From the NCBI GenBank assembly GCA_965240325.2, contig OZ251227.1:2790001-2854000 (forward strand): a stretch of 64,000 nt of DNA, given 5' to 3'. The stretch is from Rebecca billardiae RCC1528 (taxonomy: Eukaryota; Protista; Haptophyta). Shown one piece after another: positions 27,001 to 64,000 of this stretch; positions within the stretch are counted from its first letter, which is position 1, and every line of letters begins with the position of its first letter. The notes under the pieces are model-generated. The model did not search any database. It was not told where the DNA came from and was given only the letters and a program-made list of their open reading frames with translations. The translations under genes and the position numbers were made by a program.

Positions 27001-27466
27001 AGCACTCCTGACCACTGGCTCCACCATGAGGCTCTGCAGCTGGTTGAGTCTGCCCCTGGACATGCCAACCACCTCGCAGAAGTAGAATAATATCGACGTG
27101 ACATCCCACACAGTGAGCAGCTTTTTGGTCTCGGTACAGCAGTCAGCTGCCTGCACCCGCGCGGCGGCTTTGGCCACTCTGGCCTTGAGACTGGCGAACA
27201 TCCTGTCCGTTGCCAGGTGAATGTTGGTCACCACCCCTGCATACGTGAAGTATTCGCCATCCTGCAACGTGTCTATGAGGGCAGCTTGTTTTTAAATTCC
27301 CCTTTATAACGGGCTCCGGGTGATCAGACTGGCGGCCGAAGCCTCCAGCCCTTTGTCCAGTTGCCCTGTTGATGACCTGTATTGGGTCCACCTGTGCGTG
27401 CCCAGGGGGCACATACACTGCCACCTTGGATTTGGGGTAGTTGGGCTCCATATCATAGTACCACAT
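24055..27466 (-). pseudogene. LINE ORF2 remnant (RT end, RNase H, CCHC, low-complexity tail), frameshifted by a 67-bp insertion
   Basis: ORFs 27143-27466 and 24055-27267 join in frame (…INRATGQ-AALIDTLQDGEY…) when 27290-27356 is removed. The RT catalytic core is absent because of the 5' truncation. Confidence 0.85.
27290..27352 (-). repeat. 63-bp exact copy of the LINE 3' terminus (23722-23784) with a 4-bp TTGT duplication
   Basis: The sequence is identical at both sites. TTGT flanks it at 27286-27289 and 27353-27356. Confidence 0.92.
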
Positions 27467-27731
27467 ACTTTACATTGTTGTCAGTATTGAGGACTGGTGG
27501 CCCTTAAACCAGGGCGGATGGAATCGTATAATGGCATTTATAGGCTCCATACACGATTCCCTATATTGACGAACCTGCAAATGCACCCTGCTGTCGTCAG
27601 CGAGAGATGAGTGGCGGTTTCAATGCCCCACTCTATTTTGGGCAGTAAGCAAGCCCGCTGCTGACCATCGAAAGGGCAAGCTGCTCACAACGTTGTTGGC
27701 CAGGAAGCCACGACGCGCGGTTAGTCGCACG

Positions 27732-30700
27732 ATGAGAGTGCCTGCTGTGCTCGCGCGCCGGCCGCCGCCGCGGTCGCTGCTGCTGCTGCTCGCGCTGCTC
27801 ACGGCCTTGGGATCCGCGGCCGCCGACATCGTTCGCGGCGGCACGACCATCCCGACGCCTACGGGCGATGCCAACGCCGCCTCGTTCCTCGGGGATGTCG
27901 ACGGCGACGGCAACGACGAGATTGTCACCTGCGACCGCGACGAGAAGCAGTGCACCATCAACTTCATGAACGACCAGGGCGGGTCGATGTCGCAGCAGAC
28001 GTTTGGCGCTGGGATCGGCGCCGGCTGGACCTCGGCGCCGAGCGGCGTCGGCAAGTTTGGCCAGGAGCCGCGCGGCGTCGACGTGGACGGCGATGGGCGG
28101 CCGGAGCTCATCGTCGGCGACCACCTCAGCGACGTCGTGCACGTGGTGTTCCTCGGCGTCGACGGGAGCGTGAGCTCGAACAAGGTCATCGGCGACTTGC
28201 AGGGCGGCAAGGGTGCCTTCACGCCGAGCTTGTCCTTCGGCCACGGCATCGGCGTGCTCGGCGACGTCGACGGCGACGGCGTCCCCGACATCCTCGTCGG
28301 CGCCTACCTGCAGGGCAGCTCGGGCGTCGCGAACGTGCTGATGCTGAACACGGACGGCAGCGTGTCGGCGGAGGCGCTGATCACATCGTCGTTCACCACG
28401 TCGGGCTTTGGCGCCTCGTGCGGCGGCATCGGCGACTGGGATGCCGACGGCGTGCCCGACGGAATTGTCGCGGCCAGGAGCGACGACTTTTACGGCACGG
28501 ACAGCGGCGCCGCGTACATCCTGCTGCTCAACACGGACGGGACGGTGAAGACGGAGCTGCGCGTCGACCCGGACAGGTACCTGCCCATCGCCTCGCTCGA
28601 CCGCTTCGGCTTCGGTGGCGGCACGAGCGCGCGGCCGCTCGACCTGAACGAGGACGGTTTTGGCGACCTGATCATCGGAGCATACGGCACGGACGACGGC
28701 CAGACGGACGCGGGCGCGGTGTACGTGTGCTACATGAGCGGGTCGCTCAACGGCACGGTGCTCGGGTACGACAAGATCAGCGACATCAGCGGCGGGCTCA
28801 CCGCCGCGACGGGCAGCCTCGTCGCGAACGCGCGCTTCGGCTTCCACACCGATGTGCGCGTGTTCACCAACAGCTCGCTGAACGTGACGCAGGTCGACCT
28901 CCTCGTGGCAGGCCTGCCGCTCGAGAGCAACCCGGGCCGCGTCGTGCACCTGCTCACGCTCGAGACGCCGTCGATCAACTTCGCGCCCAGCAGCCCGCCG
29001 AGCCCGCCGAGCCCGCCGCCGTCGCCGCCGCCGTCGCCGCCGCCAAGCCCGCCGCCGTCGCCGCCGCCGAGCCCGCCGGCGCCGCCGCCGAGCCCGCCGC
29101 CGTCGCCGCCGCCGAGCCCGCCGCCGAGCGACCCGAAGCCGCCGCCATCCCCGCCGCCGTCGCCGCCGCCGAGCCCGCCGCCGAGCGACCCGAAGCCGCC
29201 GCCGTCCCCGCCGCCGTCGCCGCCGCCACCGAGCTCGCCGCCGAGCCCGCCGCCGTCGCCGCCGCCGTCGCCGCCGCCGAGCTCGCCGCCGAGCCCGCCG
29301 CCGTCGCCGCCGCCGAGCCCGCCGCCGAGCTCGCCGCCGAACCCGCCGCCGTCGCCGCCGCCGAGCCCTCCGCCGAGCGACCCGAGCCCGCCGCCGTCTC
29401 CGCCGCCGAGCCCGCCGCCCGCGCCGACCGTGCGCGCGCAGCCCGAGTTCCAGGCGTGCGAGGCCGACCCGTCGACGTGCACGACGCTCGACCTGAGCAG
29501 CCGCGGTCTCACGGGCGACCTGCCCACCGAGCTCGGCGATCTGACCGCGCTCAACGAGCTCAAGGCGAATGGGAACGCTCTCACGGGCCCGCTCCCGACC
29601 GAGCTCGGCCGGCTGACGAACCTCACCACGCTGCGGCTCAGCGCGAACGCGCTCAGCGGCGCGGCGCTGCCAGCCAGCGTCTTCGCCAACCTGAGCGCGC
29701 TCGCGCACCTCGACCTGTCCGACAACCCGCTCAGCGGCTCGGTGCCGACCGAGCTCGGCGTGTGGATGCCCGCGCTCACGTCCGCCCGGCTCGGCCTGTG
29801 GTACGGCAGCGCGGTCGTGATGACGGGCACGGTGCCCTCGGAGCTCGGGCTGCTCACGCGGATGGTGGACTTCACGCTCGCTGCCAACGACATCACGGGC
29901 ACCGTGCCGTCGGAGCTCGGCCTGTTCACCGCCATCAGCAACCTCGAGCTCGGGCGCAACTCGCTCACCGGCACGCTGCCGCCCGAGCTCTTCGCGGGCA
30001 AGACGGATCTGGTCAGGGTCATGCTGAGTGCCTCCTTCATCAGTGGGACGCTGCCGGCCGAGCTCGCGCAGGCCACGGCGCTCACGACGCTCGACTTCAG
30101 CTGGACCAGCATGAGCGGCCCGCTCAATGGCTCGACGCTCATCGCCCTGCCCGCGCTCGCTCACCTGGACTTGAGCGGCACGTCCGTGTCGGGCACGCTC
30201 CCGACTGAGATCGGCGTGCTCACCTTGCTGACGTACCTCGACTTTGACAGGGCGTCGATGAGCGGCGCGCTGCCGACCCAGATCGGCCTGCTCACTGCGC
30301 TCAAGCACAGCGTCTTCAACCTGAACTCGCTCAGCGGCGCGGTGCCCACCGAGCTCGGGCTGTGCACCGTGCTCACGAACATTGACCTCGGCTCCAACGC
30401 GCTGAGCGGGCAGCTCCCCACCCACCTCGGGCTGCTCACTTCGCTGACGAGGGCCGACTTTGCCCTCAACGCGCTGACCGGCGCGCTGCCCGGCGAGGTC
30501 GGGCTGCTCACCGCGCTGACCAGGCTCGACGTCGTGAACAACTCGCTCGCCGGAGCGCTGCCGACCCAGCTCGGGCTGCTCACCGCGCTCAAATTCCTCG
30601 GGCTCGAGGCCAACGCGCTGACCGGCGCGCTGCCCAGCCAGGTCGGGCTCCTCACCGCGCTCACGTCGCTGCAGTGCGGCGCCAACTCGCTGAACGGTAC

Positions 30701-33700
30701 GCTGCCCAGCCAGATCGGCGATTGCACTGCGCTGACCACGCTCGACCTGTACGACAACTCGCTACTCGGCCCGGTGCCGCCCGAGATCGGCCAGCTCACC
30801 GCGCTCACCCTCCTCGGCCTTCGGCGCAACTCGCTGACCGGCGCCGTGCCCAACGAGCTCGGGCTCCTCACCGCTCTGACCAGCCTGGACTGGTACACCA
30901 ACTCGCTGAGCGGCGCGCTGCCCAGCCAGATCGGCAACCTCACCGCGCTCGAGAGCATCGACTTCGAGTCCAACTCGCTCACCGGCACGCTGCCCAGCGC
31001 GGTCGGGCTCCTCACCGCGCTCACCAAGCTCGACTTCGACTGGAACTCGCTCACGGGCATCTTGCCGAGCGAAGTCGGGCTGCTGACCGCGCTGACCAAG
31101 ATGGCCTTTGCAGAGAACAGCCTGACCGGCACGATCTACCCACAGATTGGCTTGCTCACCGAGCTGGCGTACATCGACTTTGAGTCCAACTCGCTCACAG
31201 GCACCTTGCCGAGCGAGACCGGGCTGCTCACCAAGCTGGCGTACCTCGACCTGTACGACAACACGCTCTCCGGCACGCTGCCCACCGAGACAGGCCTTCT
31301 CACGGCCCTCGAGCTGCTCGACCTGTGGGGCAGCTCGCTCACCGGCACCCTGCCCGTCCAGATCGGCCTGCTCACCGCGCTCGAGTACTTCGACCTCCAC
31401 TTCAACAGGCTGACGGCCGCGGTGCCGACCGAGATTGGCAGCCTGACCGCGCTGACCGGGCTCAGGCTGGACGACAACTCGTTTTCAGGCGCAGTGCCCG
31501 TCGAGACTGGCCAGCTCACCGTGCTGGAACTCCTCCGGCTCGACGAGAACTCGCTGACCAACACGCTGCCCGCAGAGATCGGCAGCCTCACCGCGCTGAC
31601 CTACCTCGACGTGGAGGTGAACGCTCTCAACGGCACGATCCCCGTCGCCATCTCGCAGCTCACGGCGATGAAATGGCTCGTCCTCAGCGATAACGCGTTC
31701 ACGGGCTCACTGCCGAGCGAGCTGGGGCTGCTGACGCAGCTCCTCTTCATCAACGTCGAGTACAACCAGCTGGGTGGCTCGATCCCGAGCGAGCTCGGCG
31801 TGCTGACGTCGATGACCTACCTCGACTTTGAGGACAACACCCTGGTCGGTCCGGTGCCCACCGAGATCGGCCTGCTGACCGGGTTGACGTTCCTCGACTT
31901 CTACGTCAACCTGCTGACGTCCTCCATCCCGACCGAGATCGGGCAGCTGACGGGGGTCACCTACCTCGACTTTGACGACAACAGCATGTCGGGAGGGCTG
32001 CCCAGCACCCTGGGGCTGCTCACGGCGATGGACAAGTTCTACATCGACGGCAACCCCGACGTGGTCGGCACGATCCCGACAGAGATTGCTGCGCTCACCG
32101 CGCTCACCTACTTTGGCACGTCCGGCTCAGGCGTGTGCGGCGACCTGGCCCTGCTGGGGCTCAACGGCTCGGGCATCATCTACCCGGACCCGCTGCCCGT
32201 GTGCTTGTCGCCGCCGCCGTCGCCGCCACCGCCGCCGCCGCCGCCGCCGCCCAACGTGGTGCTCGCCGAGGTGAAGATCGCGCCCGGCTCGAACGGCAAG
32301 GCCAGCCTCACCGCCGGCAACGAGCAGCGCTTTGGCTTTGGCGTCGCCGGCATCGGCGACCTCGACGGCGACGGCGTGCCCGACGCGATGGTGGGCGCCA
32401 TCACGGAGGACGTCGGCGGCTGGAACCGCGGCGCGGCGTACGTGCTCTTCATGAACAGCAACGGCACGGTCAAGTCCGAGCAGCGGATCGGCGGCGACTC
32501 CGGCGGGCTCGCGTACGATTTTCCTCTCGACTCGCAGTTTGGCATCGGCATGGACGCGATCGGCGACCTCGACGGCGACGGGATCACCGAGCTGGTGGTG
32601 AGCGAGAAAGCCGCGGACGACAAGGGCGCGATCTTCGTGCTGTTCATGCACCAGAACGGCACGGTGAGGGAGTACACGCGCCTCGCCGACGGTGTCGGCC
32701 CGCTGGTGCTGCCGGCGAGCGCGTACTTCGGCTACGGCCTCAGCGGCCTTGGTGACCTGGACGGCGACGGCGTGCCCGACCTGGCCGCGGGCGGGATCAA
32801 GTATCTGTCGTCGAGCCAGGGCGCGCTGTCTGTGATGTTCCTCAACACCGACGGCACCATCAAGGCGATCGAGACGATCACGATGGGCGTGGGCGGCTTC
32901 AACGCCACGCTGGGGAGCACCGACGAGTTTGGCAAGGACCTGGACGCGCTGGGCGACGTGAACGGGGACGGCATCGTCGACCTGCTGGTCGGCGCGCCGG
33001 GCGACGGCACGGGCGGCACGACGGACCGCGGCGCGGCGTACGTGCTCTTCCTGAACACGACAGGCCGCGCGAAGGGCTACTACAAGCTCACGCCCGGCGT
33101 CGACCTCCCCGCCGTGGCCGATGGCACGTTTGTGGGGCGCGGCGTGGGCGGCGCGGGCGACCTCGACGGCGACGGCGTGCCCGACGCTCTGGTCGGCGCG
33201 CCCGGGCCGGCGTCGAGCGGCGGCGCGCTGTACGTGGTGTACCTCAACGCCGACGGCAGCGCGAAGCACGTGGACACGATCGCCGACGGCTTTGGCGGCT
33301 TCGTCGGGCCGCTCAGCCTGGACGACAACTTCGGGGCGCGCGTGCGTCTGCTCGGTGACCTCGACGGTGCCGGCAGTGCGCCAGAGATCATCGTCGGCGC
33401 GCACGGGGACGACGACGCCAACTGGGGCCAAGGCGCAGTGTATGTGCTCTCGCTGTCGGGCTACTTCCCGCCGAGCCCGCCGCCGAGCCCGCCGCCGAGC
33501 CCGCCGCCGCCGCCGCCGCCGGTGTGCTCCTCCTTTCCGAGCAGGCTGGAGTGTCAGGAGTCCTACGTCAACTGCACCACGATCAATTCCACCTGCACGA
33601 AGCTGTGCGCGCGCGAGCGCGGCGGCGCGCGCCGGCTGTGCGAGGGCGAGCGCGCGCGTAGGCGTGCCCCGCCCCGCCGTGCGTCGCACGCGCCGCGATG

Positions 33701-36700
33701 ACCCGCGCGCGCCCATCGCTGCCCGCCGCCGCGGACGCTGCCACCGACCTGCCATTCGCCGCGCGCCGACCACAGCACCCTCCCGTCGCTGGGGCTCACG
33801 GGCTCGCTGCCGAGCGGCCTCTTCACCCTCACGCGGCTCACGGCCTTGAATGTGCCCGAGAACAGCTTGACGGCGAGCATCCCGACGGAGACCGGGCTGC
33901 TCACCGCGCTCACCTCCCTGTGCGCGCCGCGCGGCCCCGCGCGCGCGACGCTGCTGCGCCTTGGCGCGTGCTCACTCCCACGCGCTTGCCCGCGATCCGC
34001 CCGCGCTTGCGGCGTGCGTGCGCCTGCGCTCGCAGCAAGCTGAATAGCAACTCGCTCACGGGCTCCGTGCCAACAGAGCTGGGGCAGCTGACGTCGCTGT
34101 TCACGCTCACCACCGGCAGCAACCCCCTCAACTCCACGCTGCCGTCCGAACTCGGCGCGATGAGCGTGCTGGCGACGCTGACGCTGGGCCAGAACGCGCT
34201 CCGCGGCTCGATTCCGTCCGAGCTCAGCGCGCTGTCTGCGCTCACGATGCTGCGGCTGACCGGCAACTCGCTCACGTCGCTCGTGCCGGAGGGGCTCTTC
34301 ACGTTGCCGAGCCTCGTCGGGCTGTACCTCTCCTCGAACTCGCTGACGATCAGCCTGCCGCGCACCATCGGCAACCTCACCGCGATCAAGACGCTCGAAG
34401 TCGCCTCGAACCTGGGGGCCAACGTGATCACCTCGACGCTGCCAACCGAGCTCGGGCTGCTCCCGAATCTCGAGACCTTCAAGCTGAACAAGGCGTCGCT
34501 GAGCTCGGCGCTGCCCTCCGAGCTCGGGCAGATGCCCAAGCTCCTCTCGCTGCAGCTCGCCGACAACCTGCTGTTCGGGTCGCTGCCGACCGAGCTCGGC
34601 GCGCGCGCGGGGCTGAGGTCGCTGGGTGTGCCCGGCAACACGCTGACCGGCCCGGTGCCGACCGAGCTGGGCGAGATCGCGGCGTTGACGGTGCTCGACG
34701 CGGCGAGCAACTTGCTCGCGGGCACGCTGCCGACCGAGATCGGGCGGCTCGCCGGCGCGACGAGTGTGCTGCTGGGTAGTAACGCCGGCCTCTCGGGCAC
34801 GCTGCCCAGCTCGCTCGTCAACATGACTGCGCTCGTCCTACTTGATCTCGAGGGCACGGCCACGTGCGGGCCGCTGCCGATCTCGAGCACGCTCGTGCAG
34901 CCAAGCCCGTTCCCACCGTGCCCGTCGCCGCCGCCGCCGCCGTCGCCACCGTCGCCGCCGTCGCCGCCGCCCAACGTGGTCCTCGCCGAGGTGAAGATCG
35001 CGCCCGGCTCGAACGGCAAGGCCAGCCTCACCGCCGGCAACGAGCAGCGCTTTGGCTTTGGCGCCGCCGGCATCGGCGACCTCGACGGCGACGGCGTGCC
35101 CGACGCGATGGTGGGCGCCATCACGGAGAACGCCGGCGGCTGGAACCGCGGCGCGGCGTACGTGCTCTTCATGAACAGCAACGGCACGGTCAAGTCCGAG
35201 CAGCGGATCGGCGGCGACTCCGGTGGGCTCGCGTACAACTTCCCCGACGCCTCGCAGTTCGGCATGAGCATGGACGCGATCGGCGACCTCGACGGCGACG
35301 GGATCACCGAGCTGGTGGTGAGCGAGAAGACGAACGACAGCAGCCGCGGCGCGCTCTTCGTGCTGTTCATGCACCAGAACGGCACGGTGAGGGAGTACAC
35401 GCGCCTCGCCAACGGCGTCGGCGGGCTCACGCTGCCGGCGAACGCCTACTTTGGCTATGGCGTGGCCGGCCTCGGCGACCTCGACGGCGACGGCGTGCCC
35501 GACGTGGCCGCGGGCCGGATCAGAATCTCGACGTCGAGCAAGGGCGCGGTGGTGGTGATCTTCCTCAACGCCGACGGCTCTATCAAGGCGTTCCAGCTCA
35601 TCGCCGAAGGCAACGGCGGCTTCTCCGGCGGGCTGGCGGGCACTGCCGAGTTTGGCAAGGACCTGGACGCGCTGGGCGACGTGAACGGGGACGGCATCGT
35701 CGACCTGCTGGTCGGCGCGCCGGGCATCGGCTCGGGCGGCACGAACCGCGGCGCGGCGTACGTGCTCTTCCTGAACACGACAGGCCGCGTGAAGAGCCAA
35801 TACAAGCTCACGCCTGGCGTCGACCTCCCCGCCGTGGCCGATGGCACGTTCGTGGGGCGCGGCGTGGGCGGCGCGGGCGACCTCGACGGCGACGGCGTGC
35901 CCGACGCTCTGGTCGGCGCGCCCGGGGCGGCGAGCGGCGGCGCGCTGTACGTGGTGTACCTCAACGCCGACGGCAGCGCGAAGTACGTGGACACGATCGC
36001 CGACGGCTTTGGCGGCTTCGTCGGGCCGCTCGTCTCGGGCGACCTCTTCGGCTCGCGCGCACACCTGCTCGGTGACATGGACGGCGACGGCTCGCCCGAG
36101 ATCATTGTTGGCGCGCACGCCGACGACGACGCCGGCTTCGACAACGGCGCGGTTTACGTGCTCACGCTGTCGGGCTACCTCCCGCCGAGCCCGTCGCCCG
36201 CCCCGCCGCCGAGCCCGCCGCCCGCGCCGACGGTGCGCGCGCAGCCCGAGTTCCAGGCGTGCGAGGCGGACCCGAGCACGTGCACGGCGCTCAGCCTCGG
36301 CAGCCGCGCGCTCACGGGCGAGCTGCCCACCGAGCTCGGCGATTTCACCGCGCTGACCTCGCTCGACGTCCAGCAGAACTCGATCGCGGGCACGATCCCC
36401 ACGGAGCTCGGTCGGCTCAGCGCGCTCACAGGCCTTCTCCTCGCCCAGAACTCGCTCACGGGCCGCCTGCCGACCCATCTGAGCGACACGAACCTCACGG
36501 TGCTCGACGTGCAGTCCAACTCGCTCAACGGCACGCTCTTCGATGGAGATATCTTCGGCGGGCTGGCCGGGCTCACCGAGCTCAACGCTGATTTCAACCC
36601 CTTCAGCGGCACGATCCCCATTCAGGTGCCTGACACGGTGCCGCTGCTCGAGGTCCTGCACGTCGGGTTTGGCGGCTGCACGATCGGCGGTACGATCCCG

Positions 36701-54700: not shown

Positions 54701-57700
54701 CCATCGCCGCCACCGTCGCCTCCGCCGAGCCCGCCGCCGCCGAGCCCGCCGCCGAGCCCGCCGCCATCGCCGCCACCGTCGCCGCCGCCGAGCCCTCCAC
54801 CGCCCAGCCCGCCGCCGAGCCCACCGCCGAGCCCGCCACCCGCGCCACCGCCGTCGCCGCCGCCGCGCCCCCCGCCGAGCCCGCCGCCGAGCCCGCCGCC
54901 GAGCCCGCCGCCGCCGAGCCCGCCGCCGAGTCCGCCGCCGTCGCCACCGCCAAGCCCGCCGCCCAGCCCACCGCCGCCGTCGCCACCGCCGAGCCCGCCG
55001 CCGTCGCCGCCGCCGAGCCCGCCGCCGAGTCCGCCCCCGCCAAGCCCGCCTCCAAGCCCGCCGCCAACGCCGCCCCCATCGCCTCCGCCGAGCCCTCCTC
55101 CACCGAGCCCGCCGCCGAGCCCGCCGCCAACGCCACCGCCGTCGCCGCCGCCGAGCCCGCCGCCGCCTGCGCCACCACCGAGCCCACCGCCCTCACCACC
55201 GCCCGCACCGCCACCGAGCCCGCCGCCACCGTCGCCGCCACCGTCGCCGCCGCCGTCGCCGCCACCCTTGCCGCCTCCGAGCCCGCCGCCTCCGAGCCCG
55301 CCGCCGAGCCCGCCGCCTACGCCGCCGCCCTCGCCGCCACCACATCCGCCACCGAGCCCGCCGCCCTCGCCGCCGCCCGCGCCGCCGCCGAGCCCGCCGC
55401 CACCCTCGCCACCGCCGAGCCCGCCGCCGAGCCCCCCGCCAACGCCGCCGCCAAGCCCGCCGCCCCCCAGCCCGCCGCCAAGTCCGCCGCCCTCGCCACC
55501 GCCATCCCCGCCGCCGAGTCCGCCGCCGCCGAGCCCGCCGCCGAGCCCACCACCGGCGCCGCCGCCGAGCCCGCCGCCGAGCCCGCCGCCGCCAAGCCCG
55601 CCGCCGAGCCCACCACCATCGCCACCGCCCGCGCCGCCGCCGAGCCCGCCGCCCCCTGCGCCACCGCCCAGCCCGCCGCCGAGCCCACCGCCCGCTCCGC
55701 CGCCGAGCCCACCGCCACCCAGCCCACCACCAAGCCCGCCACCCTCGCCACCCCCTTCGCCGCCACCGAGCCCACCGCCGCCGAGCCCGCCGCCAAGTCC
55801 GCCGCCATCGCCGCCACCTGCGCCGCCACCAAGCCCGCCGCCCCCTGCGCCACCGCCCAGCCCGCCGCCGAGCCCGCCGCCCGCTCCGCCGCCGAGCCCA
55901 CCGCCACCCAGCCCACCACCAAGCCCGCCACCCTCACCACCCCCTTCGCCGCCGCCGAGCCCACCGCCGCCGAGCCCGCCGCCAAGTCCGCCGCCATCGC
56001 CGCCGCCGAGCCCACCACCTCAGCCGCCGCCAAGCCCGCCACCGTCGCCGCCGCCTGCGCCGCCGCCGAGCCCGCCGCCGCCCGCTCCGCCGCCGAGCCC
56101 GCCGCCCACACCGCCGCCCTCGCCGCCACCATCGCCGCCACCACCCTTCCCACCTCCGAGCCCGCCACCTCGCCCGCCGCCCTCCCCGCCACCCTTGCCG
56201 CCGCCCTCGCCACCGCCGGCACCGCCGCCTTCACCACCGCCGACACCGCCGCCGAGCCCGCCGCCAGCGCCACCACCGTCGCCGCCGCCCAGCCCGCCGC
56301 CGCCTCGCCCGCCGCCCAGCCCGCCGCCCAGCCCGCCGCCCGCGCCTCCGCCGAGCCCGCCGCCTCCGAGCCCGCCGCCCAGCCCGCCGCCAACACCGCC
56401 GCCAACACCGCCGCCGAGCCCGCCACCGCCGAAGCCGCCGCCAAGCCCGCCGCCGAGCCCGCCGCCGGCACCACCGCCAAGCCCACCACCGCCAAGCCCG
56501 CCGCCGAGCCCGCCACCGAGCCCGCCGCCTGCTCCGCCGCCGAGCCCGCCGCCGCCGAGCACGCCGCCAAGCCCGCCGCCACTGCCGCCTCCGAGCCCGC
56601 CGCCAGCTCCGCCGCCCAGCCCCCCGCCGAGCCCGCCGCCCGTGCCGCCGCCGAGCCCGCCGCCACCCGCGCCGCCGCCGAGCCCGCCGCCCGCGCCGCC
56701 ACCTCTGCCGCCGCCGAGCCCCCCGCCGAGCCCGCCGCCTTTGCCACCGCCCACGCCGCCGCCGAGCCCGCCGCCGCCGAGCCCGCCGCCGAGCCCGCCG
56801 CCGAGCCCGCCGCCGGCCCCGCCGCCGAGTCCGCCGCCGCCACGTCCGCCGCCAAGCCCGCCACCGTCGCCGCCGCCGTCGCCACCGCCGCAGCCGCCGC
56901 CGAGCCCGCCGCCCTTGTCGCCTCCATCGCCGCCGCCGAGCCCGCCGCCGCCGTTGCCGCCGCCGAGCCCGCCGCCGAGCCCGCCGCCCTTGCCGCCTCC
57001 AAGCCCTCCGCCGCCGCTCTTGCCGCCCAGCCCGCCGCCAGCCCCGCCGCCGAGCCCACCGCCGTTGCCCCCGCCGAGCCCGCCGCCATCGCCGCCACCA
57101 CGGCCTCCGCCCTCGCCGCCACCCATGCCGCCGCCCTCGCCGCCCCCGAGCCCGCCACCGAGCCCGCCGCCGCCAACGCCACCGCCATCGCCTCCGCCGT
57201 CGCCGCCGCCAAGCCCGCCGCCAAGTCCGCCACCACCGGCCTCGCCGCCGTCGCCGCCGCCGTCGCCGCCGCCGTCGCCGCCGCCGAGCCCACCGCCCCC
57301 GCTCGCACCGCCGTCGCCGCCGCCCAGCCCGCCACCGGCCCCGCCGCCCAGCCCGCCGCCCAGCCCGCCGCCGACGACTCCACCCGCACCGCCACCCGCA
57401 CCGCCGCCGAGCCCGCCGCCGTCGCCGCCGCCCGCACCGCCGCCGAGCCCGCCGCCCGGTTTGCCGCCGTCACCGCCGCCAGCGCCGCCGCCGAGCCCGC
57501 CGCCGCCGCCGCCGCCGAGCCCGCCGCCGAGCCCGCCGCCGAGCCCGCCGCCGAGCCCGCCGCCGCTGCCGCCGCCGAGCCCGCCACCTGGCCTGCCGCC
57601 ATCACCGCCGCCGTCGCCGCCTCCGTCGCCCAACCCCGCTCCCCCGCCGAGCCCGCCACCGAGCCCGCCGCCCGCGCCGCCGCCCGCGCCGCCGCCCGCA

Positions 57701-60700
57701 ACACCGCCCATGCCGCCGCCTGTGCCGCCGCCGCGCGAGCCTCCCGGTCTGCCGCCGCCGCCGCCGAGCCAGCCACCGCCGCCATCGCCATCGCCACCGC
57801 CGCCATCGCTGCCGCCGAGCCCCCCGCCGACCCCGCCCTCGCCGCCACCGACAGCTCCACCGCCGCCGCGCGCCGAGCCATTCCCGCCGCCATCGCCGCC
57901 CGCGCGGCCGCCACCGCCGCTGCCCGGGTTGCCGCCGCCCCCGCCGCCGCCGCCGCCCGGCACGACAGACTACGTCTCGCTCACGCTGAGCATGGACGCG
58001 TCCGATTTCGGCACGACCGCCACGGCGGAGGTGCTCGCCGGGCTCGAGGCGGTGACGGGGGTGCCCTCGGCGAACATGCAGGTCGTCGACTTTGCGCCCG
58101 CGTCTGTGTCGGTCGTCGTGAGCGTCTTCCAGGCCGCGGCGGGCGGGACGGCGGTCGACCTCGAGGCCGCGTTCGCCAACCAGACGCTCGCGAGCCTGAG
58201 CGCCGCGAGCGGGCTCGACCTCGCCACGCTGCCCCTCGTGCTGCTCGCCGGGTGCCGCGACACGGCCGCGTCGAACTATGACGAGCTCGCGACATATGAG
58301 CCTGCGGGCGTGTGCGCTTACGAGTCGCCGCCGCCGCCGCCCTCGCCGTCGCCGCCGCGCTCGCCGCCGCCGCCGAGCCCGCTGCCGCCGAGCCCGCCGC
58401 CGCCGCCGTCGCCACCGCCGCCCCTCCCGCCGCCGCCACCGTTGCCGCCGCCGCCCAGCCCGCCGCCGCCGCCCAGCCCGCCGCCGCCCAACCCGCCGCC
58501 GCCGCCCAGCCCGCCGCCGCCGAGCCCTCTGCCGCCCAGCCCGCCGCCGCCCAGCCCGCTGCCGCCCAGCCCGCCGCCGCCCAGCCCGCCGCCGCCCAAG
58601 CGCTCGGAGAACGTGACCTCGTTCATCGCCGTGCGCGCCGTGCCCACCAGCCTCGACTTCTCCGACGTGCCGTGGCTGGGCGAGGGCAGCGTGCTCAAGT
58701 GGGTGCCCAACGGCGGCAGCGCGGGCACCGACTGCGCGGCCGACGCGCTGCCCGAGCTGGGCGGCGAGGCCACGCTCGGCGCGGAGCTGCGCGCCAGCCT
58801 CACCTTCGACGTGTCCGGGTACGGCTACCGCTTCTGCTACTTCAACCCGGGCGGCGCGGCCGAGTGGCGCCTCGAGCCGCTCTTCCTGCTCGACGTGTTC
58901 GAGCTGAGCTCGGCGAGCCGCGCCGTGGCGGTGGCGGGCGTCGAGGCGCGCGTGGGCTTCGGCGGCGTCGGCGTGGCCTCGGGCGACGGCGCGTACTGGG
59001 TCGACGCCTCCGCGCCCGACTGCGACGCCGCCGCGCCGTCGGCCGCGCTCGGCGGCGAGCAGACCCTCGTCGGCTCGCGCGCGCTCTTCACGTTTGCGCA
59101 GACCGCGTCCGCGCTGCGGCCGTGCTTCCGCTTCCGCGACCAGCCGTTCGCGCTGTACGCGGGGATCACGCTGAGCGTGTACGGCCTGGACTCTGGACCG
59201 CTCGCGCTCGACACGGTCGTCGGCGCGAGCGTCGCGCTCAACGTGAGCGGCCCGGGCGTGAGCGGCGCTGACCGCGCGTACTGGGTGCCCGCTTCGGACA
59301 GCAGCTGCGCGCGCGCGCCGCTCGCGGCGTACGGCGGCGTGCAGCCGGTGGGCGCGTCGGGCGTGGCGTCGTTCGTGCCCACCGCGGGCGCGGCGGCGCT
59401 CGCGCTGTGCTACGCCTTCGGCGCGCAGCCGTTCGCGCGGTACGCTGACCACACGCTCATCGTGCGCGCGGTCACCGGCCCCGCGGCCACGGTCGCCGTC
59501 GTCGGCGCGTCCGAGCTGGTCGCGTTTGCAGGCGTCGGCCTGCGGGCGGGCGACCGCGCCAAGTGGGTGGCGCCGGGCGCGGCGGGGTGCGCCGACGCGG
59601 CGGACGACGCGAGCGCCGAGGCGGTGCTCGGCGCGGACGCCACCGCCGCCTTCACGCTCGGCGCGGCCGCGATCGGCCTGCAGCTCTGCTTTGCGCACGG
59701 CGGGGCCGCCTTCAAGCTGTACCCCGCGGTGCGCCTGTCCGCGTACGCGCTGGACGGCCCCGCGGAGTCGCGCGCGGTGGTGGGCGCGGAGGAGAGCGTG
59801 GGCTTCACCGGCGTCGGAGTGGGCGCCGGCGAGCAGCCCGACGGCGCGTTCTGGGTCGAGGCGGGCTCGGGCTGCGCCGAGGGCGGCGCGCGCGCCGAGT
59901 ACGGCGGCGCGCTCAACGTGACGGCGGGCGGCGGCGTCACGTTCACGCTGCTCGCGCCCGCGCCCTCGGGCGCGCTCTCGGCGTGCTACCGGTTCGGGGC
60001 GGAGCCGTGGGCGCACTACGCCTCGATCGCGCTGCGCACGCTGCACGTGCTCGGCCCGGCGAGCACCGTCGCCGCCGTGGGCGCGCTCGAGCCGATCTCG
60101 TTCGACGCGGTCGGCGCGTCCGACTCGGACCGAGCCTTCTGGGCGGACGCGGCCGCGACGGCGTGCGACGCGGCCGCGGCCGCGGCGGGCGGCGGCGTGC
60201 AGGCGGTGCTGCGCGGCGGCGCCAACTTCACCTTCGGCGCGCCCGCGCTCGGGCTGCGGTTGTGCTACCAGTTCGCCTCCAAGCCGTTCCGGCTGTACGG
60301 CGCGCTCGGTCTGGACGTGCTGCAGGTGAGCGCGCCCGCGCTCAGCGTCGCCGTGGCGGGCGTGGCGGAGCGCGTGGCGTTCGGGGGCGTCGGGCTGGCC
60401 GACGGCGACCGCGCGTACTGGGCGCCGGCGGGCACGCCCTCGTGCGCCGCCGCGCCGCCGTCCGCCGCGCGCGGCGGCGTGCAGCCCGTGCTCGGCGCCA
60501 ACGCCACGTTCAGCCTCGACGCGCCGACGCCGCTCGGGCGGCACGTGTTGTGTTACGCGTTTGGCGACGAGCCGTTTGCGCTGTTTGGCGGCGTGCAGCT
60601 CGACGTGTACGCGGTGCGCGCGCCCGCGTTCACGCAGGTGGTCGTGGGCGTCGCCGAGACGATCGTCTTTGCGGGCCACGGCCTCGCCGACGGCGACCGC

Positions 60701-63700
60701 GCCAAGTGGGTCGCGCCCGACGCGGCCGACTGCGACGCGCCGCCGTACGCGCACGGCGGCGCGCTGCCGCTTGCCGCGTCGCGCGCCGAGTTCACGCTCG
60801 AGGCGGCCGCGCTCGGCTTGCAGCTGTGCTTTGCCTTCGGCAGCCGGCCGTTCCGGCTCTACGCCGCGGGCACCGCCGACGCGATCACGCTCGACGCGCT
60901 GCAGGTGACCGAGCCGTCGTACACGCTCGCGGTCGTGGGCGTGCCCGAGGCCGTCGCGTTTGGCGTCGTCGGGCTGGAGGACGGCGACCTCGCCAAGTGG
61001 GTGCCGCTGGTGGAGGGCGCGAGCCTCGCGTGCGAGGCCGAGCCGCTCGACGCGTACGGCGGCGCGCAGCCCGTCACCAACGGCTCGGCCACCTTCCTCT
61101 TCAGCCAGCCGCACGCGGAGCTGCGTTTGTGCTATGAGCACGCGCAGGAGCCGTGGGCGCCGTACGAGGCGATCAGACTGCGCGCCGCGCAGGTGCAGGC
61201 GCCCGCGGAGAGCGTGGCGGTGGTGAACGTGAGCGAGACCGTCGTCTTCGCCGGCGTCGGCGTCCGGGCCGGTGACGGCGCCTTCTGGGTCGAGGCCGCC
61301 GCTGAGTGCGCCGCGGGCGGCGCGCGCGCCGCGTACGGCGGCGAGCTCAACGTGACGGCGGGCGGCGTCGTCACGTTCACGCTGCTCGCGCCCGCGCCCT
61401 CGGGCGCGCTCGCGCTGTGCTTCCGGCACGCGGCCGAGGCGTGGGCGCACTACCCGGCCATCGTGCTGCGCACGCGCCAGATCCTCGGCCCGGCGCTCTC
61501 GACCGTCGTCGTGGACGTGCCCGAGCAGCTCGCCTTCTCCGGCGTGGGCGTCGGCGCGGGCGACGTCGCGTGGTGGGTGCGTGCGGACGCGACGGACTGC
61601 GCGCTCGGCTCGGAGACGGGGTACGCCGTCTCGAGCGACGGCGCGGTCGTCGTCACGTTCACCACGGCCGGGCTGCAGTGGCAGCTCTGCTACGCCTTCG
61701 CCACCAAGCCCGCCAAGCTGTACGGCCCGTCGACCGCCGAGCCGATGCTGCTGGACGCACTCGGGCTGAGCGCGCCTCTCTCGACGGTCGCGGTGCTCGG
61801 CGTCGCGGAGACGTTCTCGTTCGCGGGGGTGGGCGTGGGCGCGGGCGACCGCGCGTACTGGGCGCCGGCGAGCGCGGACGCGTGCCCCACCGCCGCTCCA
61901 GCCGACGAGCGCGGCGGCTTGCGCAACGTCTCCGCCGTCGGCACGGCCGCATTCACCTTTGGCGCGACGACCGAGCTCGAGCTCGGCGGGCTGCGCCTGT
62001 GTTACGCCTTCGAGGGCGAGCCGTACAAGCTGTACGCCGCGATGCGCGTCGAGGTGTACGATGTGGCCGGCCCCGCGTTCTCGCGCGTCGTCGTCGGCGT
62101 GCCCGAGACCGTGGCCTTCAGCGGCTACGGCGTGCGCGCGGGCGACCGCGCCAAGTGGGTGGGCGTGGCCGCGGCCGACTGCTCGAGCGTCGCGTTCGGT
62201 GCGGCGCGCACGCTCGGCGCCGGCCTGAGCGCGAGCTTCACGCTGCCCGCGGGCGGGCTGGGCCTGGCGCTGTGCTTTGCGTTCGCGGGCGAGCCGTTCA
62301 AGCGGTACCCGTCGCTCACGCTCGACGCGCTCGTCGTCAGCGCGCCTGTCTCGAGCCTGGCGGTGGTGGGCGTGCAGGAGTCGCTCGCCTTCTCAGGAGT
62401 GGGCCTCGTGCCGGGCGACGGCGCGTACTGGCTGCCGTACAACGGCACGGCCGTCGACTGCGCCGACCCGGTGGACGGCGCGCCGCGCGCCGCGTACGGC
62501 GGCGCGCAGACCCTCGACGCCGCCCTCGCCGCTTCCTTCACCTTCGACGTCGCCCACCCGGACCTGCGCCTGTGTTACACGCACGCGGACGAGCCCGTGC
62601 GCTCGTACGGCGCGGCGATCACGCTGGTCGTGGCCGAGGTGCAGGGCCCGGCGTTCACCGTCGCGGTGGCGGGCGTGGAGGAGGCGCTGCCGTTCGAGGG
62701 CGTCGGCCTCGCGGCGGGCGACCAGGCGTACTGGGTCGAGGACGCGTCCGCGTGCCCGCCGGCGGGCGGCGGCGCGCTCGACGAGTACGGCGGCGTGTTC
62801 AACACGACCGGCCTCGGCGTGGGCGCCTTCACGCCGCTCGCGCCCAAGGCCGGCCTCTCGCTGTGCTACCGCTTCGCGGCCGAGCCGTGGGCGCACTACG
62901 CGGGCGTGAGTCTCGACGTGTACCAGCTCGACGCGCTCGGCGGCGGCAGCCGCGCCGTCGTCGGCGAGGCGCACGCCGTCACCTTCTCGGGCTTCGGCGT
63001 GGCGGACGGCGACGCCGCGTACTGGGTGCCCGCGGGCACGGCCTCGTGCGCGGACGAGCCGCCGCTCGTGCAGTGGGGCGGGCAGAAGACGCTGGGCGCG
63101 GGCCTCGGCGCGAGCTTCACCTTCCTGCGCAAGTTTGGCGGCCTCGGGTACATGCTCTGCTACCGCTTCCGCGCCGAGCCGTTCGCGCTGTACGCCAGCC
63201 TGCAGCTGGACGTGCTCGAGGTGAGCGGGCCGTTCGTCGTGCTCGCGGTCGTCACGCTCGAGCGCACCTTCGCCTTCCAGGGCGTGGGCGTCGGCGCGGG
63301 CGACGAGGCGTACTTCGTGCCCGCGGCCGCGACGGCGTGCGACGAGGCGGCGAGCGTGAGCGGCGCCGCGGCCGTCGTCGCCGCCGACCGCACCGCCTCG
63401 TTCACGTTTGGCGCGGTCGCGACGGGCCACCGATTGTGTTACCGCTTTGGCGGCGCGTCCGGCGGCCTGCCGTGGCGCCGCTTCGCCGGCGTCACGCTCT
63501 CGGTCACCGTGCCCGGCGACCCGTTCGCGCTCGCCAACTTCGAGTCGCTCTCGCCGACGGGCGCGACGCTCGCCAACAGCGGCATCGCGACCAACGTGAC
63601 CATCGTCGGCACGCAGTTCGACCTGGGCGCGCAGAGCAAGGCGGACATCATCTACTGCGTGTTTGACGGCACGCGCGTGCGCGTCAGCTCGATCACGCCC

Positions 63701-64000
63701 ACCGAGATCTCGTGCACCGCGCCCGCCGCGAGCGCCGCGGGCGAGGTGACGCTCTCGCTCGTCGCGGACGAGGACGACGAGGACGGCGAGCCGCGCGAGC
63801 CCATCGCCATCACCAACGAGTTCGCCTACTTCGACATGGCGGGCGTGACGGTGGGCGCGCTCGCGCCGCCGGGCGCGCCGCAGGGCACGGCCAACGTGGA
63901 GGTCGCGGTCTCCGGCGCCAACTACGCCGACTACGGCGGCCTGCGCTGCGCGTTCATCGGGCCCAACTTCGCCGGCGGCCGCGTCGAGGTTGCGGCGACG
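27732..64000 (+). CDS. Giant secreted or cell-surface multidomain protein (FG-GAP propellers, LRR solenoids, SPPP stalk, novel repeats, IPT/TIG); at least ~11,990 aa and continuing past the window end; exons 27732-33604, 33776-33919 and 34036 to beyond 64000
   Basis: Signal peptide (RSLLLLLALLTALGSAAA) and two GT-AG introns that restore the LRR frame. The same reading frame was checked at 34037, 39962, 50582, 57962 and 63962. The ORF track has no stop-terminated ORF in that frame after 34037. Confidence 0.9.
27870..28980 (+). other. FG-GAP (integrin-alpha-type) beta-propeller 1; further propellers at ~32253-33465, ~34972-36178, and three at 39956-43733
   Basis: Repeated FG...GD(L/V)DGDG.PD..VGA...GA.Y(V/I)L motifs. 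Confidence 0.92.
29421..50581 (+). other. Ten capped 24-aa plant-type LRR solenoids (starts ~29421, ~33520, 36224, 37472, 38768, 43796, 45308, 46820, 48266, 49475), interspersed with FG-GAP propellers
   Basis: LxxLxLxxNxLxGxLPxxxG repeats. Nine of the ten have the N-cap APTVRAQPEFQACEADPSTC, and the C-cap is GVCG...G...PDPL..C. Confidence 0.93.
39890..43770 (+). repeat. Three apparently identical 1287-bp coding tandem repeats (FG-GAP propeller plus SPPP linker)
   Basis: Units start AGCGTGGTCCTGTCC at 39956, 41243 and 42530. Identical shadow ORFs recur every 1287 bp. Confidence 0.97.
50582..57960 (+). repeat. ~7.4-kb coding Ser-Pro3/4 (extensin/HRGP-like) tract, ~2,460 aa
   Basis: Continuous (AGC/TCG)(CCG)3-4 repeats in the frame of the giant gene. 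Confidence 0.95.
58610..63510 (+). other. 17 tandem ~96-aa beta-rich repeats with conserved GD.A.W...C...LCY.F...P(F/W)..Y
   Basis: GDxA(Y/K/F)W-like motifs occur about every 290 nt from ~58680 to ~63299, with two conserved Cys per unit. Confidence 0.88.
63535..64000 (+). other. IPT/TIG-like immunoglobulin-fold domains (one complete, one partial)
   Basis: SLSPTG...VTIVGTQF...YCVF...ISCTAP...GEVTLSL...FAYF, followed by LAPPG...VAVSGANY...LRCAF. Confidence 0.8.

What the first reader, a model, noticed from the sequence alone, without database searches (positions are those of the whole stretch)
27732..64000. Hidden giant of at least ~12,000 aa: a multi-headed LRR/FG-GAP surface protein on a proline stalk
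The ORF track misses it because exon 3 (34036 onward, ~30 kb) never reaches a stop. The order is signal peptide, then P-L-P-L-P-L-L-L-P-P-P-L-L-L-L-L (P = FG-GAP propeller, L = capped LRR solenoid), a ~2,460-aa SPPP tract, a small alpha/beta domain, 17 novel repeats and IPT/TIG domains. I know of no described protein that strings integrin-type propellers and plant-type LRRs on an extensin-like shaft. The head-plus-shaft logic recalls Chlamydomonas agglutinins and mastigoneme proteins, at much larger scale. It is a candidate adhesin, recognition filament or flagellar-hair component.
Basis: partly seen in the sequence, partly recalled or inferred. Interest (0 to 1): 0.9.

Follow-up and report, generated by a model that had tools for sequence, protein, structure and literature searches.

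The report
Giant sixteen-headed surface protein on a proline stalk
One three-exon gene of a GC-rich alga, probably a pavlovophyte haptophyte, encodes at least 11,993 residues: 16 binding heads (6 FG-GAP, 10 LRR) on a 2,466-residue Ser-Pro rod. Its closest relatives are anchored by a REJ-GPS-5TM membrane base, so it is probably the largest member of an undescribed family of receptors on a pole.

Summary
One frame is open from 33662 to the window end (10,113 codons). Two GT-AG introns join it to an upstream exon that starts with a signal peptide at 27732. The spliced product is 11,993 aa with no stop and is still open at 64000.

The module order is exactly as reported: P-L-P-L-P-L-L-L-P-P-P-L-L-L-L-L. 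It is followed by:
- a 2,466-aa SPPP tract;
- a 116-aa alpha/beta domain with a SEA-like fold;
- 17 copies of an unnamed Ig-like repeat;
- one and a half TIG domains.

GC3 is 0.91-0.99 in every module.

New here: the tail is 42% identical and collinear with Diacronema lutheri KAG8459354.1. That protein continues TIG-REJ-EGF-GPS(HL/T)-5TM with an EF-hand, and its locus really starts with a signal peptide and an unannotated ~1,870-aa SPPP stalk. This gene is therefore most likely a many-headed member of a REJ/GPS receptor-on-a-pole family. The design resembles Chlamydomonas MST3, polycystin-1 and plant LRR-extensins.

Not shown: the C-terminus (outside the window), expression (no RNA run was listed), and the copy number of three 100% identical propeller cassettes.

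The scan's first readers noted similar stalked REJ/GPS genes elsewhere in this genome. Those notes are unchecked.

The parts
27732..27824 (+). Start codon and signal peptide (about 31 aa)
   Evidence: First ATG of the ORF. It is followed by a basic n-region, a Leu-rich core and a small-residue cleavage region.
27825..28985 (+). P1, a divergent FG-GAP propeller module
   Evidence: Pfam FG-GAP best stretch at aa 297-332. Five Ca-loop-like motifs.
28986..29432 (+). 149-aa SPPP linker
   Evidence: Linker parsing; tandem repeats of period 12 and 57 nt.
29433..32201 (+). L1, a long capped LRR solenoid (923 aa, about 38 units of 24 aa)
   Evidence: Pfam LRR_14, LRR_8 and LRR_1; 72-nt periodicity.
32265..33461 (+). 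P2, FG-GAP propeller module (399 aa, 6 Ca-loop motifs)
33534..34900 (+). L2, an LRR module split by the two introns (33605-33775 and 33920-34035)
   Evidence: GT-AG introns with the same donor motif. The LRR register is continuous over both junctions.
34979..36178 (+). P3, FG-GAP propeller module (83% aa identity to P2)
36236..39877 (+). L3, L4 and L5, capped LRR modules (389, 412 and 366 aa; 4 Cys each)
39962..43726 (+). P4, P5 and P6: three FG-GAP propeller cassettes. The unit is 1,287 nt and the DNA is 100% identical from 39888 to about 43770.
   Evidence: Exact identity; Pfam FG-GAP E 3.9e-58.
43808..50572 (+). L6 to L10, five capped LRR modules (362-484 aa)
   Evidence: Pfam LRR_14 E 5e-102; module map. 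L4/L7/L8 are 84-93% identical.
50573..57970 (+). Ser-Pro3/4 stalk, 2,466 aa
   Evidence: 75% Pro and 19% Ser; 383 SPPP and 85 SPPPP units.
57971..58318 (+). 116-aa alpha/beta domain with a SEA-like fold, ending in a conserved GC..(4)..NY..(11)..C motif
   Evidence: AF2 pLDDT 74. Best fold matches are the IA-2/PTPRN/PTPRR ectodomains and dystroglycan, TM 0.5-0.6. Conserved in L002 and P0008.
58319..58606 (+). 96-aa Pro-rich linker
58589..63496 (+). 17 tandem copies of an unnamed ~96-aa Ig-like beta-sandwich repeat with two invariant Cys
   Evidence: AF2 pLDDT 88.5. No Pfam hit, no PDB sequence, and no similarity to TIG by hhalign.
63497..64000 (+). IPT/TIG domain 1 and the start of TIG 2; the ORF is still open at the window end
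   Evidence: Pfam TIG E 2e-07. Collinear with the TIG region of P0155 and P0004.

Best explanation
Shown: this is one real, intact, three-exon gene. It encodes a secreted polypeptide of at least 1.2 MDa with these parts, in order:
- a signal peptide;
- 16 globular ligand-binding heads, six Ca2+-loop FG-GAP propeller modules and ten Cys-capped 24-residue LRR solenoids, strung on short SPPP linkers;
- a 2,466-residue Ser-Pro3 tract;
- a SEA-like domain;
- 17 Ig-like repeats;
- TIG domains.

Inferred: the Ser-Pro tract is hydroxylated and glycosylated into a stiff polyproline-II rod. At 0.31 nm per residue it would be about 0.76 um long. It would hold the multivalent head array far from the cell. 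Beyond the window the protein most likely continues as its closest relatives do: more TIG, then REJ, EGF, a GPS autoproteolysis site, five transmembrane helices and a cytoplasmic EF-hand.

On that reading it is a membrane-anchored receptor on a pole. The heads would capture a ligand such as a partner cell, prey, bacterium or surface glycan. Force or occupancy would pass down the rod to the REJ/GPS module, as in polycystin-1, sea-urchin REJ and adhesion GPCRs, and be read out as a Ca2+-linked signal. It may equally serve as the axial fibre of a surface or flagellar hair, as MST3 does in Chlamydomonas.
For: - ORF, splice model and zero stops.
- A uniform coding signature, GC3 0.91-0.99, across all modules.
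- Pfam FG-GAP, LRR and TIG hits and the module map.
- The tail is collinear with D. lutheri KAG8459354.1 at 41.7% identity over about 1,400 aa, and with a metagenomic protein at 40%.
- Those relatives and P0008/P0009 carry TIG-REJ-(EGF)-GPS. The D. lutheri and metagenomic proteins have an intact HL/T site, and hydropathy finds five TM helices in the D. lutheri protein (three in the others examined). EF-hands are called by Pfam in the D. lutheri protein and P0008.
- The D. lutheri locus has one ORF of 5,921 codons that begins with a signal peptide, about 1,870 aa of SPPP and the same SEA-like domain.
- A third locus, L003, also has a Pro-rich stalk directly upstream of the same body.
- Precedent for a polyproline rod spanning hundreds of nm tethered by a polycystin-like membrane domain: PMC11015965.
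Against: - The C-terminus lies outside the window, so REJ, GPS and the TM helices are not seen for this gene.
- No RNA run was listed. The only run that holds the sequence is of unknown kind and very low depth.
- dN/dS between young module pairs is 0.47-0.8. That is only weak evidence of purifying selection.
- The nearest homologue in D. lutheri has no head at all.
- Hydroxylation and glycosylation of Ser-Pro tracts has not been shown in haptophytes, to my knowledge.
Confidence: 0.6

Rival explanations
1. It is a secreted, non-anchored matrix or hair glycoprotein. The same heads, rod and Ig-like array are released or built into a cell covering, and the gene ends after the TIG domains without REJ, GPS or TM helices.
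For: The window shows only extracellular modules. A second architecture class of the same repeat family has Calx-beta, Laminin_G, Pentaxin or Laminin_B domains and no Pfam REJ or GPS hit. Membrane helices were not examined in that class.
Against: All relatives above 32% identity belong to the TIG-REJ-GPS class and are collinear up to the window end.
Confidence: 0.15
2. The locus yields two or more products. An internal promoter or alternative splicing would give a headless stalk-body receptor like the D. lutheri gene, and/or a heads-only protein, so the 12,000-aa chain is rarely or never made.
For: The D. lutheri homologue starts with a signal peptide directly before its stalk. The modules are cassette-like with near-identical boundaries. 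No RNA data are available.
Against: - There is no Met or signal-like segment between L10 and the stalk. The stalk follows the L10 C-cap in frame, like every other linker.
- The frame has no stop for 30 kb, while the other frames have many.
Confidence: 0.15
3. It is an assembly artefact or a decaying gene: paralogous head cassettes mis-joined, or an array no longer under selection.
For: Three 100% identical 1,287-nt cassettes. High dN/dS among modules. Retrotransposons lie directly upstream.
Against: - No stop or frameshift in 36 kb.
- Precise in-phase splice junctions.
- All Cys caps and Ca loops are retained, and GC3 is uniform.
- Short contigs of a public run match 61.5-63.9 kb at 100%.
Confidence: 0.05

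Closest known systems
Diacronema lutheri KAG8459354.1 (hypothetical / EF-hand domain-containing protein, locus JAGTXO010000041)
   Same: The tail is 41.7% identical and collinear: SEA-like domain, Pro linker, the same Ig-like repeats and the TIG junction. The locus also has a signal peptide and about 1,870 aa of SPPP stalk.
   Different: It has no head at all, 12 repeats instead of 17, and is uncharacterised. Its annotation omits the stalk. Its REJ-EGF-GPS-5TM-EF-hand end is seen there but not for this gene.
Chlamydomonas reinhardtii MST3 and the seven SIP-binding PKD2-like glycoproteins (PMC11015965)
   Same: These are giant secreted hydroxyproline-rich glycoproteins whose polyproline-II helices span hundreds of nm. 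They carry globular extracellular domains, with LRR and SEA among them, and are tethered by a polycystin-type membrane domain.
   Different: Their anchor is a partial PKD2-like channel domain completed by SIP. It is not REJ-GPS-5TM as in this gene's relatives. They have no FG-GAP/LRR alternation, are much smaller, come from a different lineage and show no sequence kinship here.
Polycystin-1 / sea-urchin REJ / PKDREJ, and Ectocarpus Esi0130_0068 (PMC4700764, PMC1934368)
   Same: A large adhesive ectodomain with LRR and Ig-like repeats above a REJ module and a juxtamembrane GPS site. In brown algae such a protein is male-gamete-specific and under positive selection.
   Different: The relatives of this gene have no Pfam PLAT or PKD-channel hit. 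Hydropathy finds five TM helices in the D. lutheri protein, three in P0004, P0008, P0009 and P0026 and five in P0014, never the 11 of polycystin-1. Polycystin-1 also has no proline rod and no propellers.
Plant LRX (LRR-extensin) proteins and Chlamydomonas sexual agglutinins (from general knowledge)
   Same: A globular recognition head, a 24-residue plant-type LRR in LRX, fused to a Ser-Pro(n) rod.
   Different: They have a single head and a rod of tens to a few hundred residues. Extensin Tyr cross-link motifs are absent here: no Tyr appears among the eight commonest residues or in the listed repeat units of the stalk, though Tyr was not counted as such. They also lack the Ig-like/TIG/REJ body.

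Membership tests
Polycystin-1 / PKD1-like (REJ family) | REJ domain followed by a GPS/GAIN autoproteolysis site | not testable with these tools
   This region lies beyond the window end. It is present in the collinear relatives P0155, P0004, P0008 and P0009: REJ at E 1e-36 to 1e-46 in all four, Pfam GPS in P0155, P0004 and P0008, and an intact HL/T seen in P0155 and P0004.
Polycystin-1 / PKD1-like (REJ family) | PLAT domain in the first cytoplasmic loop, and 11 TM helices ending in a PKD-channel-like six-TM domain | tested here: not met
   Tested on the closest relatives only. They have no Pfam PLAT or PKD_channel hit. Hydropathy finds five TM helices in P0155, with an EF-hand in the TM3-TM4 loop.
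Extensin / hydroxyproline-rich glycoprotein | Long arrays of Ser-Pro3-5 | tested here: met
   383 SPPP and 85 SPPPP units in 2,466 aa, plus 15 shorter linkers.
Extensin / hydroxyproline-rich glycoprotein | Tyr cross-link motifs (YXY, VYK), and proven Pro hydroxylation and O-glycosylation | tested here: inconclusive
   No Tyr appears among the eight commonest residues or in the twelve commonest repeat units of the stalk. Tyr was not counted directly and the motifs were not searched. The modifications cannot be tested from sequence.
Integrin-alpha-type FG-GAP beta-propeller | Tandem FG-GAP repeats with DxDxDG Ca2+ loops forming a seven-bladed propeller | tested here: inconclusive
   Pfam FG-GAP E 1e-24 to 4e-58, with six Ca-loop units per ~397-aa module. 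Blade number was not modelled; only six units are visible in the sequence.
Plant-specific (24-residue) LRR ectodomain | LxxLxLxxNxLxGxIPxxLGxL units with Cys-pair N- and C-caps | tested here: met
   Pfam LRR_14, LRR_8 and LRR_1; 72-nt period; 4 Cys per module, two at each end. The plant LRRNT_2 model itself was not hit, so the cap is of another sequence type.
IPT/TIG | Match to PF01833 above the gathering score | tested here: met
   31.3 bits against a cut-off of 20.9.
SEA domain | Ferredoxin-like alpha/beta sandwich with a G/SVVV autoproteolysis motif | tested here: inconclusive
   Fold matches to the IA-2/PTPRN, PTPRR and dystroglycan ectodomains are weak: TM 0.5-0.6, E 2e-3 to 3e-2, pLDDT 74. 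No Pfam SEA hit. The cleavage motif is not conserved: P0008 has GSIVV, while this gene has Ala before the Ser.
Chlamydomonas MST3-type mastigoneme axial protein | Partial PKD2-like membrane domain completed by SIP; ciliary location | not testable with these tools
   The C-terminus was not seen. Relatives have REJ-GPS-5TM instead. Location needs experiment.

The most novel reading that the evidence does not exclude
A single polypeptide of more than 12,000 residues forms a micrometre-long, 16-headed, Ca2+-dependent multivalent tether ending in a REJ-GPS-5TM-EF-hand base. It would be the extreme member of an undescribed pavlovophyte gene family in which one constant stalk-and-body carries interchangeable heads (FG-GAP, LRR, RCC1 and others). 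That would be a protist counterpart of polycystin-1 and adhesion GPCRs, used for long-range contact sensing or as a membrane-anchored hair. The head arrays would expand by unequal crossing-over, as the three identical propeller cassettes suggest.
Probability: 0.4. Interest if true: 0.8.

Novelty: new variant of a known kind. Interest (0 to 1): 0.66.

Why it matters
- Size: the window alone encodes 1.20 MDa, which would put this among the largest predicted non-enzymatic proteins of any alga.
- Evolution: the logic of recognition head, polyproline rod and polycystin-type anchor, recently solved for Chlamydomonas mastigonemes, would then also exist in haptophytes, built from different parts (REJ/GPS rather than a PKD2-like domain).
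- Biology: haptophyte cell-surface recognition, whether of mates, prey, bacteria or viruses, is almost unknown at the molecular level.
- Annotation: the D. lutheri annotation misses about 1,900 codons of stalk. This family is therefore likely under-annotated in public data, which matters for comparative genomics of these algae.

Tried and rejected
- Long relatives of the tail (5.5-17.5 k aa): none found.
- Metagenome scans to extend past the window end, once by protein and once by an exact 41-mer: nothing.
- RNA runs: none listed.
- Reads laid on 58001-64000: only short contigs of depth 2-4 from a run of unknown kind. This says nothing about expression, copy number or the downstream sequence.
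- Novel repeat as a divergent TIG domain: the protein atlas suggested this, but the profile-profile comparison gave probability 0.04. Rejected.
- Solved-structure relatives of the repeat: none by sequence, and only generic Ig-like sandwiches by fold.
- dN/dS as proof of constraint: values of 0.47-1.0 are uninformative given extreme GC3 and possible diversifying selection.
- Reading without introns, as two genes: rejected. It would cut the L2 solenoid between its N-cap and its repeats and leave the second product without a signal peptide.
- Species: not determined. The nearest named proteins are from Diacronema lutheri, but at only 42% identity.
Full report

Yes. One + frame carries no stop from 33662 to the last base of the window, 10,113 codons. 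The translation is domain-rich throughout.

Upstream, a second frame is open from 27570 to 33698. Its first ATG, at 27732, is followed by a classical signal peptide.

The two frames are joined by a 144-nt exon in the third frame. Both introns (171 and 116 nt) start GTGCGCG after CT and end CAG.

Exon 2 encodes exactly two 24-residue LRR units. The LRR register is seamless from the Cys-rich N-cap in exon 1 through exon 2 into exon 3.

The spliced product is 11,993 aa and 1.20 MDa, has no stop, and is still open at 64000.

Chance is excluded:
- The other frames of the non-stalk parts contain 8-264 stops each, apart from one reverse frame of the tail with a single stop.
- GC3 is 0.91-0.99 and GC2 about 0.5 in every module from the first propeller to the TIG domain.

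**2. Anatomy**

Splitting the protein at its Pro-rich linkers gives 16 globular modules in the order P-L-P-L-P-L-L-L-P-P-P-L-L-L-L-L.

- *P modules* are 397-418 aa. They have strong Pfam FG-GAP, FG-GAP_3 and FG-GAP_2 matches and five or six DxDGDG-type Ca2+ loops. I count six repeat units per module. Blade number was not modelled.
- *L modules* are 360-923 aa of 24-residue LRRs, matching LRR_14, LRR_8 and LRR_1. Most carry four Cys, two in an N-cap and two in a C-cap.
- *Linkers* are 19-32 aa of SPPP, and one is 149 aa.

After the heads come:
- the stalk, 2,466 aa at 75% Pro and 19% Ser, with 383 SPPP and 85 SPPPP units;
- a 116-aa alpha/beta domain;
- a 96-aa Pro linker;
- 17 repeats of 91-101 aa with two invariant Cys;
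- one complete TIG domain and the start of a second.

Propellers P4-P6 are a 1,287-nt cassette present three times with no DNA difference over about 3.9 kb. This is either a very recent triplication, or gene conversion, or an uncertain copy number in the assembly. I could not test it. The length estimate therefore carries an uncertainty of up to 858 aa.

**3. The two unnamed domains**

*The repeat.* It folds with confidence (pLDDT 88.5) as a small beta-sandwich. Fold searches return only generic Ig-like domains. The best AlphaFold DB matches are unnamed entries at TM 0.66-0.68.

It has no Pfam match, no solved relative by sequence and no profile similarity to TIG.

An exhaustive profile search of 1.84 billion representatives found only 287 proteins. 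The named ones come from Diacronema lutheri, Plasmopara halstedii, Triparma verrucosa, Ectocarpus and Papus ankaliazontas.

The family occurs in two architectures:
- with TIG-REJ-GPS;
- with Calx-beta, Laminin_G, Pentaxin or Laminin_B.

*The alpha/beta domain.* It is conserved in two relatives. At moderate confidence (pLDDT 74) it models as a ferredoxin-like sandwich. Its best matches are the SEA-fold ectodomains of IA-2/PTPRN, PTPRR and dystroglycan. The SEA cleavage motif is not conserved in this gene.

**4. What the relatives show**

The tail is collinear at 41.7% identity over about 1,400 aa with D. lutheri KAG8459354.1. It is 40% identical to a metagenomic protein, P0004.

The D. lutheri protein continues with TIG, REJ (E 1e-44), an EGF-like module, a GPS with an intact HL/T site, five hydrophobic helices and an EF-hand pair in the loop between helices 3 and 4. 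P0004, P0008 and P0009 have the same TIG-REJ order. Pfam calls GPS in P0004 and P0008, and an EF-hand in P0008.

No PLAT or PKD-channel domain is detected in them. They are REJ/GPS receptors but not canonical polycystin-1.

I fetched the D. lutheri locus. Its ORF is open for 5,921 codons, not the 3,751 annotated. It begins with a signal peptide and about 1,870 aa of SPPP, followed by the same SEA-like domain. A third locus, L003, also has a Pro-rich stalk running into the same body.

The conserved unit is therefore: signal peptide, (head), SPPP rod, SEA-like domain, Ig-like repeats, TIG, REJ, GPS, membrane helices (five in the D. lutheri protein) and an EF-hand. The D. lutheri copy has no head. 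The gene studied here has sixteen.

First-stage notes of this scan describe at least ten further loci in the same genome with LRR, RCC1 or FG-GAP heads on 2,200-2,950-aa stalks above REJ/GPS/5TM. They are unchecked, but they fit what I verified in D. lutheri.

**5. Mechanism**

*Shown:* a secretory signal, extracellular-type modules, a multivalent head array and a very long Ser-Pro tract.

*Inferred from established knowledge:*
- Ser-Pro3-4 tracts become glycosylated polyproline-II rods. For such rods spanning hundreds of nm see PMC11015965.
- At 0.31 nm per residue the rod would be about 0.76 um long. The whole molecule would exceed 1 um.

*Inferred by homology:* a REJ-GPS-5TM-EF-hand base.

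The most likely working model is a membrane-anchored tether. Its distal propellers and LRRs bind ligands with high avidity. Tension or occupancy is sensed at the GPS/REJ module and coupled to Ca2+.

A structural role as the core of a surface or flagellar hair, as for MST3, is compatible with the same anatomy.

**6. What is not shown**

- *C-terminus.* Two metagenome scans failed to extend the sequence. An unchecked note puts the next gene about 23 kb downstream.
- *Expression.* No RNA run was listed. The one public run that holds the sequence is of unknown kind. It yields only 151-273-nt contigs at depth 2-4, four of them identical to the window between 61.5 and 63.9 kb.
- *Selection.* dN/dS between young module pairs is 0.47-0.80. 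This is compatible with relaxed or diversifying selection and does not prove constraint.

**7. Comparison and novelty**

A length-restricted search (3-9.6 k aa) with the head array found bacterial FG-GAP giants, LRR giants and a few proteins with both families. None of the ten hits checked by script, which included every hit carrying both the FG-GAP and the LRR families, has the proline rod plus this tail. A protein-atlas search gave only weak leads, such as vertebrate LGI (LRR plus an EPTP propeller) and small bacterial FG-GAP+LRR proteins.

Literature searches found no description of such proteins in haptophytes.

The design principle is known from four sources:
- Chlamydomonas MST3 and its seven relatives with LRR, SEA or SRCR heads and polyproline regions;
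- polycystin-1 and sea-urchin REJ;
- the Ectocarpus gamete REJ-GPS protein;
- plant LRR-extensins.

I therefore rate this a new variant of a known kind. The new elements are the 16-module alternation of propellers and LRRs, the scale, the lineage and the REJ/GPS-type base.

**8. Verdict**

Interest is 0.66. The architecture is striking, well supported, and probably the flagship of an undescribed receptor family. The membrane end, the expression and the function are still inference.

Noticed in passing
L002:4051-21813 (Diacronema lutheri JAGTXO010000041.1): The annotated protein KAG8459354.1 (3,751 aa) starts inside a 5,921-codon open frame. The unannotated upstream part encodes a signal peptide and about 1,870 aa of SPPP. 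Genes of this family are probably truncated in the public annotation.
   Followed up: yes
window:39888-43770: A 1,287-nt cassette (propeller plus linker) is present three times with zero DNA differences. This is a very recent triplication, gene conversion or an assembly copy-number issue.
   Followed up: partly
window:19857-22553 (-): An ORF with a strong Anoctamin/TMEM16 match (E 5e-57). This is the cellular gene found upstream, beyond a LINE-like element.
   Followed up: partly
window:12136-18162 (+) and 24058-27291 (-): A copia-type polyprotein (RVT_2 and retroviral SH3-like domain) and an ORF with an RNase H domain. These are retroelements directly upstream of the giant gene.
   Followed up: partly
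P0007 (7,348 aa; ENA, Logan and NCBI assemblies, unnamed): A protein with 45 matched stretches of the same unnamed Ig-like repeat. It recurs on eight contigs of 22-69 kb from different assemblies. Its organism and architecture were not examined.
   Followed up: no
P0008:40-60 (L003, Logan SRR30664515): The SEA-like domain of this relative carries GSIVV, close to the SEA autoproteolysis motif G/SVVV. The gene studied here and the D. lutheri copy lack the Gly.
   Followed up: partly
window:33605-33611 and 33920-33926: Both introns share the same extended donor, CT|GTGCGCG, and a CAG acceptor. This may be the genome's preferred splice signal.
   Followed up: no
window:58250-58318; L002:10240-10326; P0008:95-125: A conserved GC-x4-A-x-NY-x11-C motif closes the SEA-like domain in all three relatives. 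AF2 models it poorly (pLDDT about 40). It may be a separate small disulfide knot.
   Followed up: no
P0017/P0167 (Plasmopara halstedii XP_024575440.1): In oomycetes and Triparma the same repeat is combined with Calx-beta, Laminin_G, Pentaxin or Laminin_B domains instead of TIG-REJ-GPS.
   Followed up: partly
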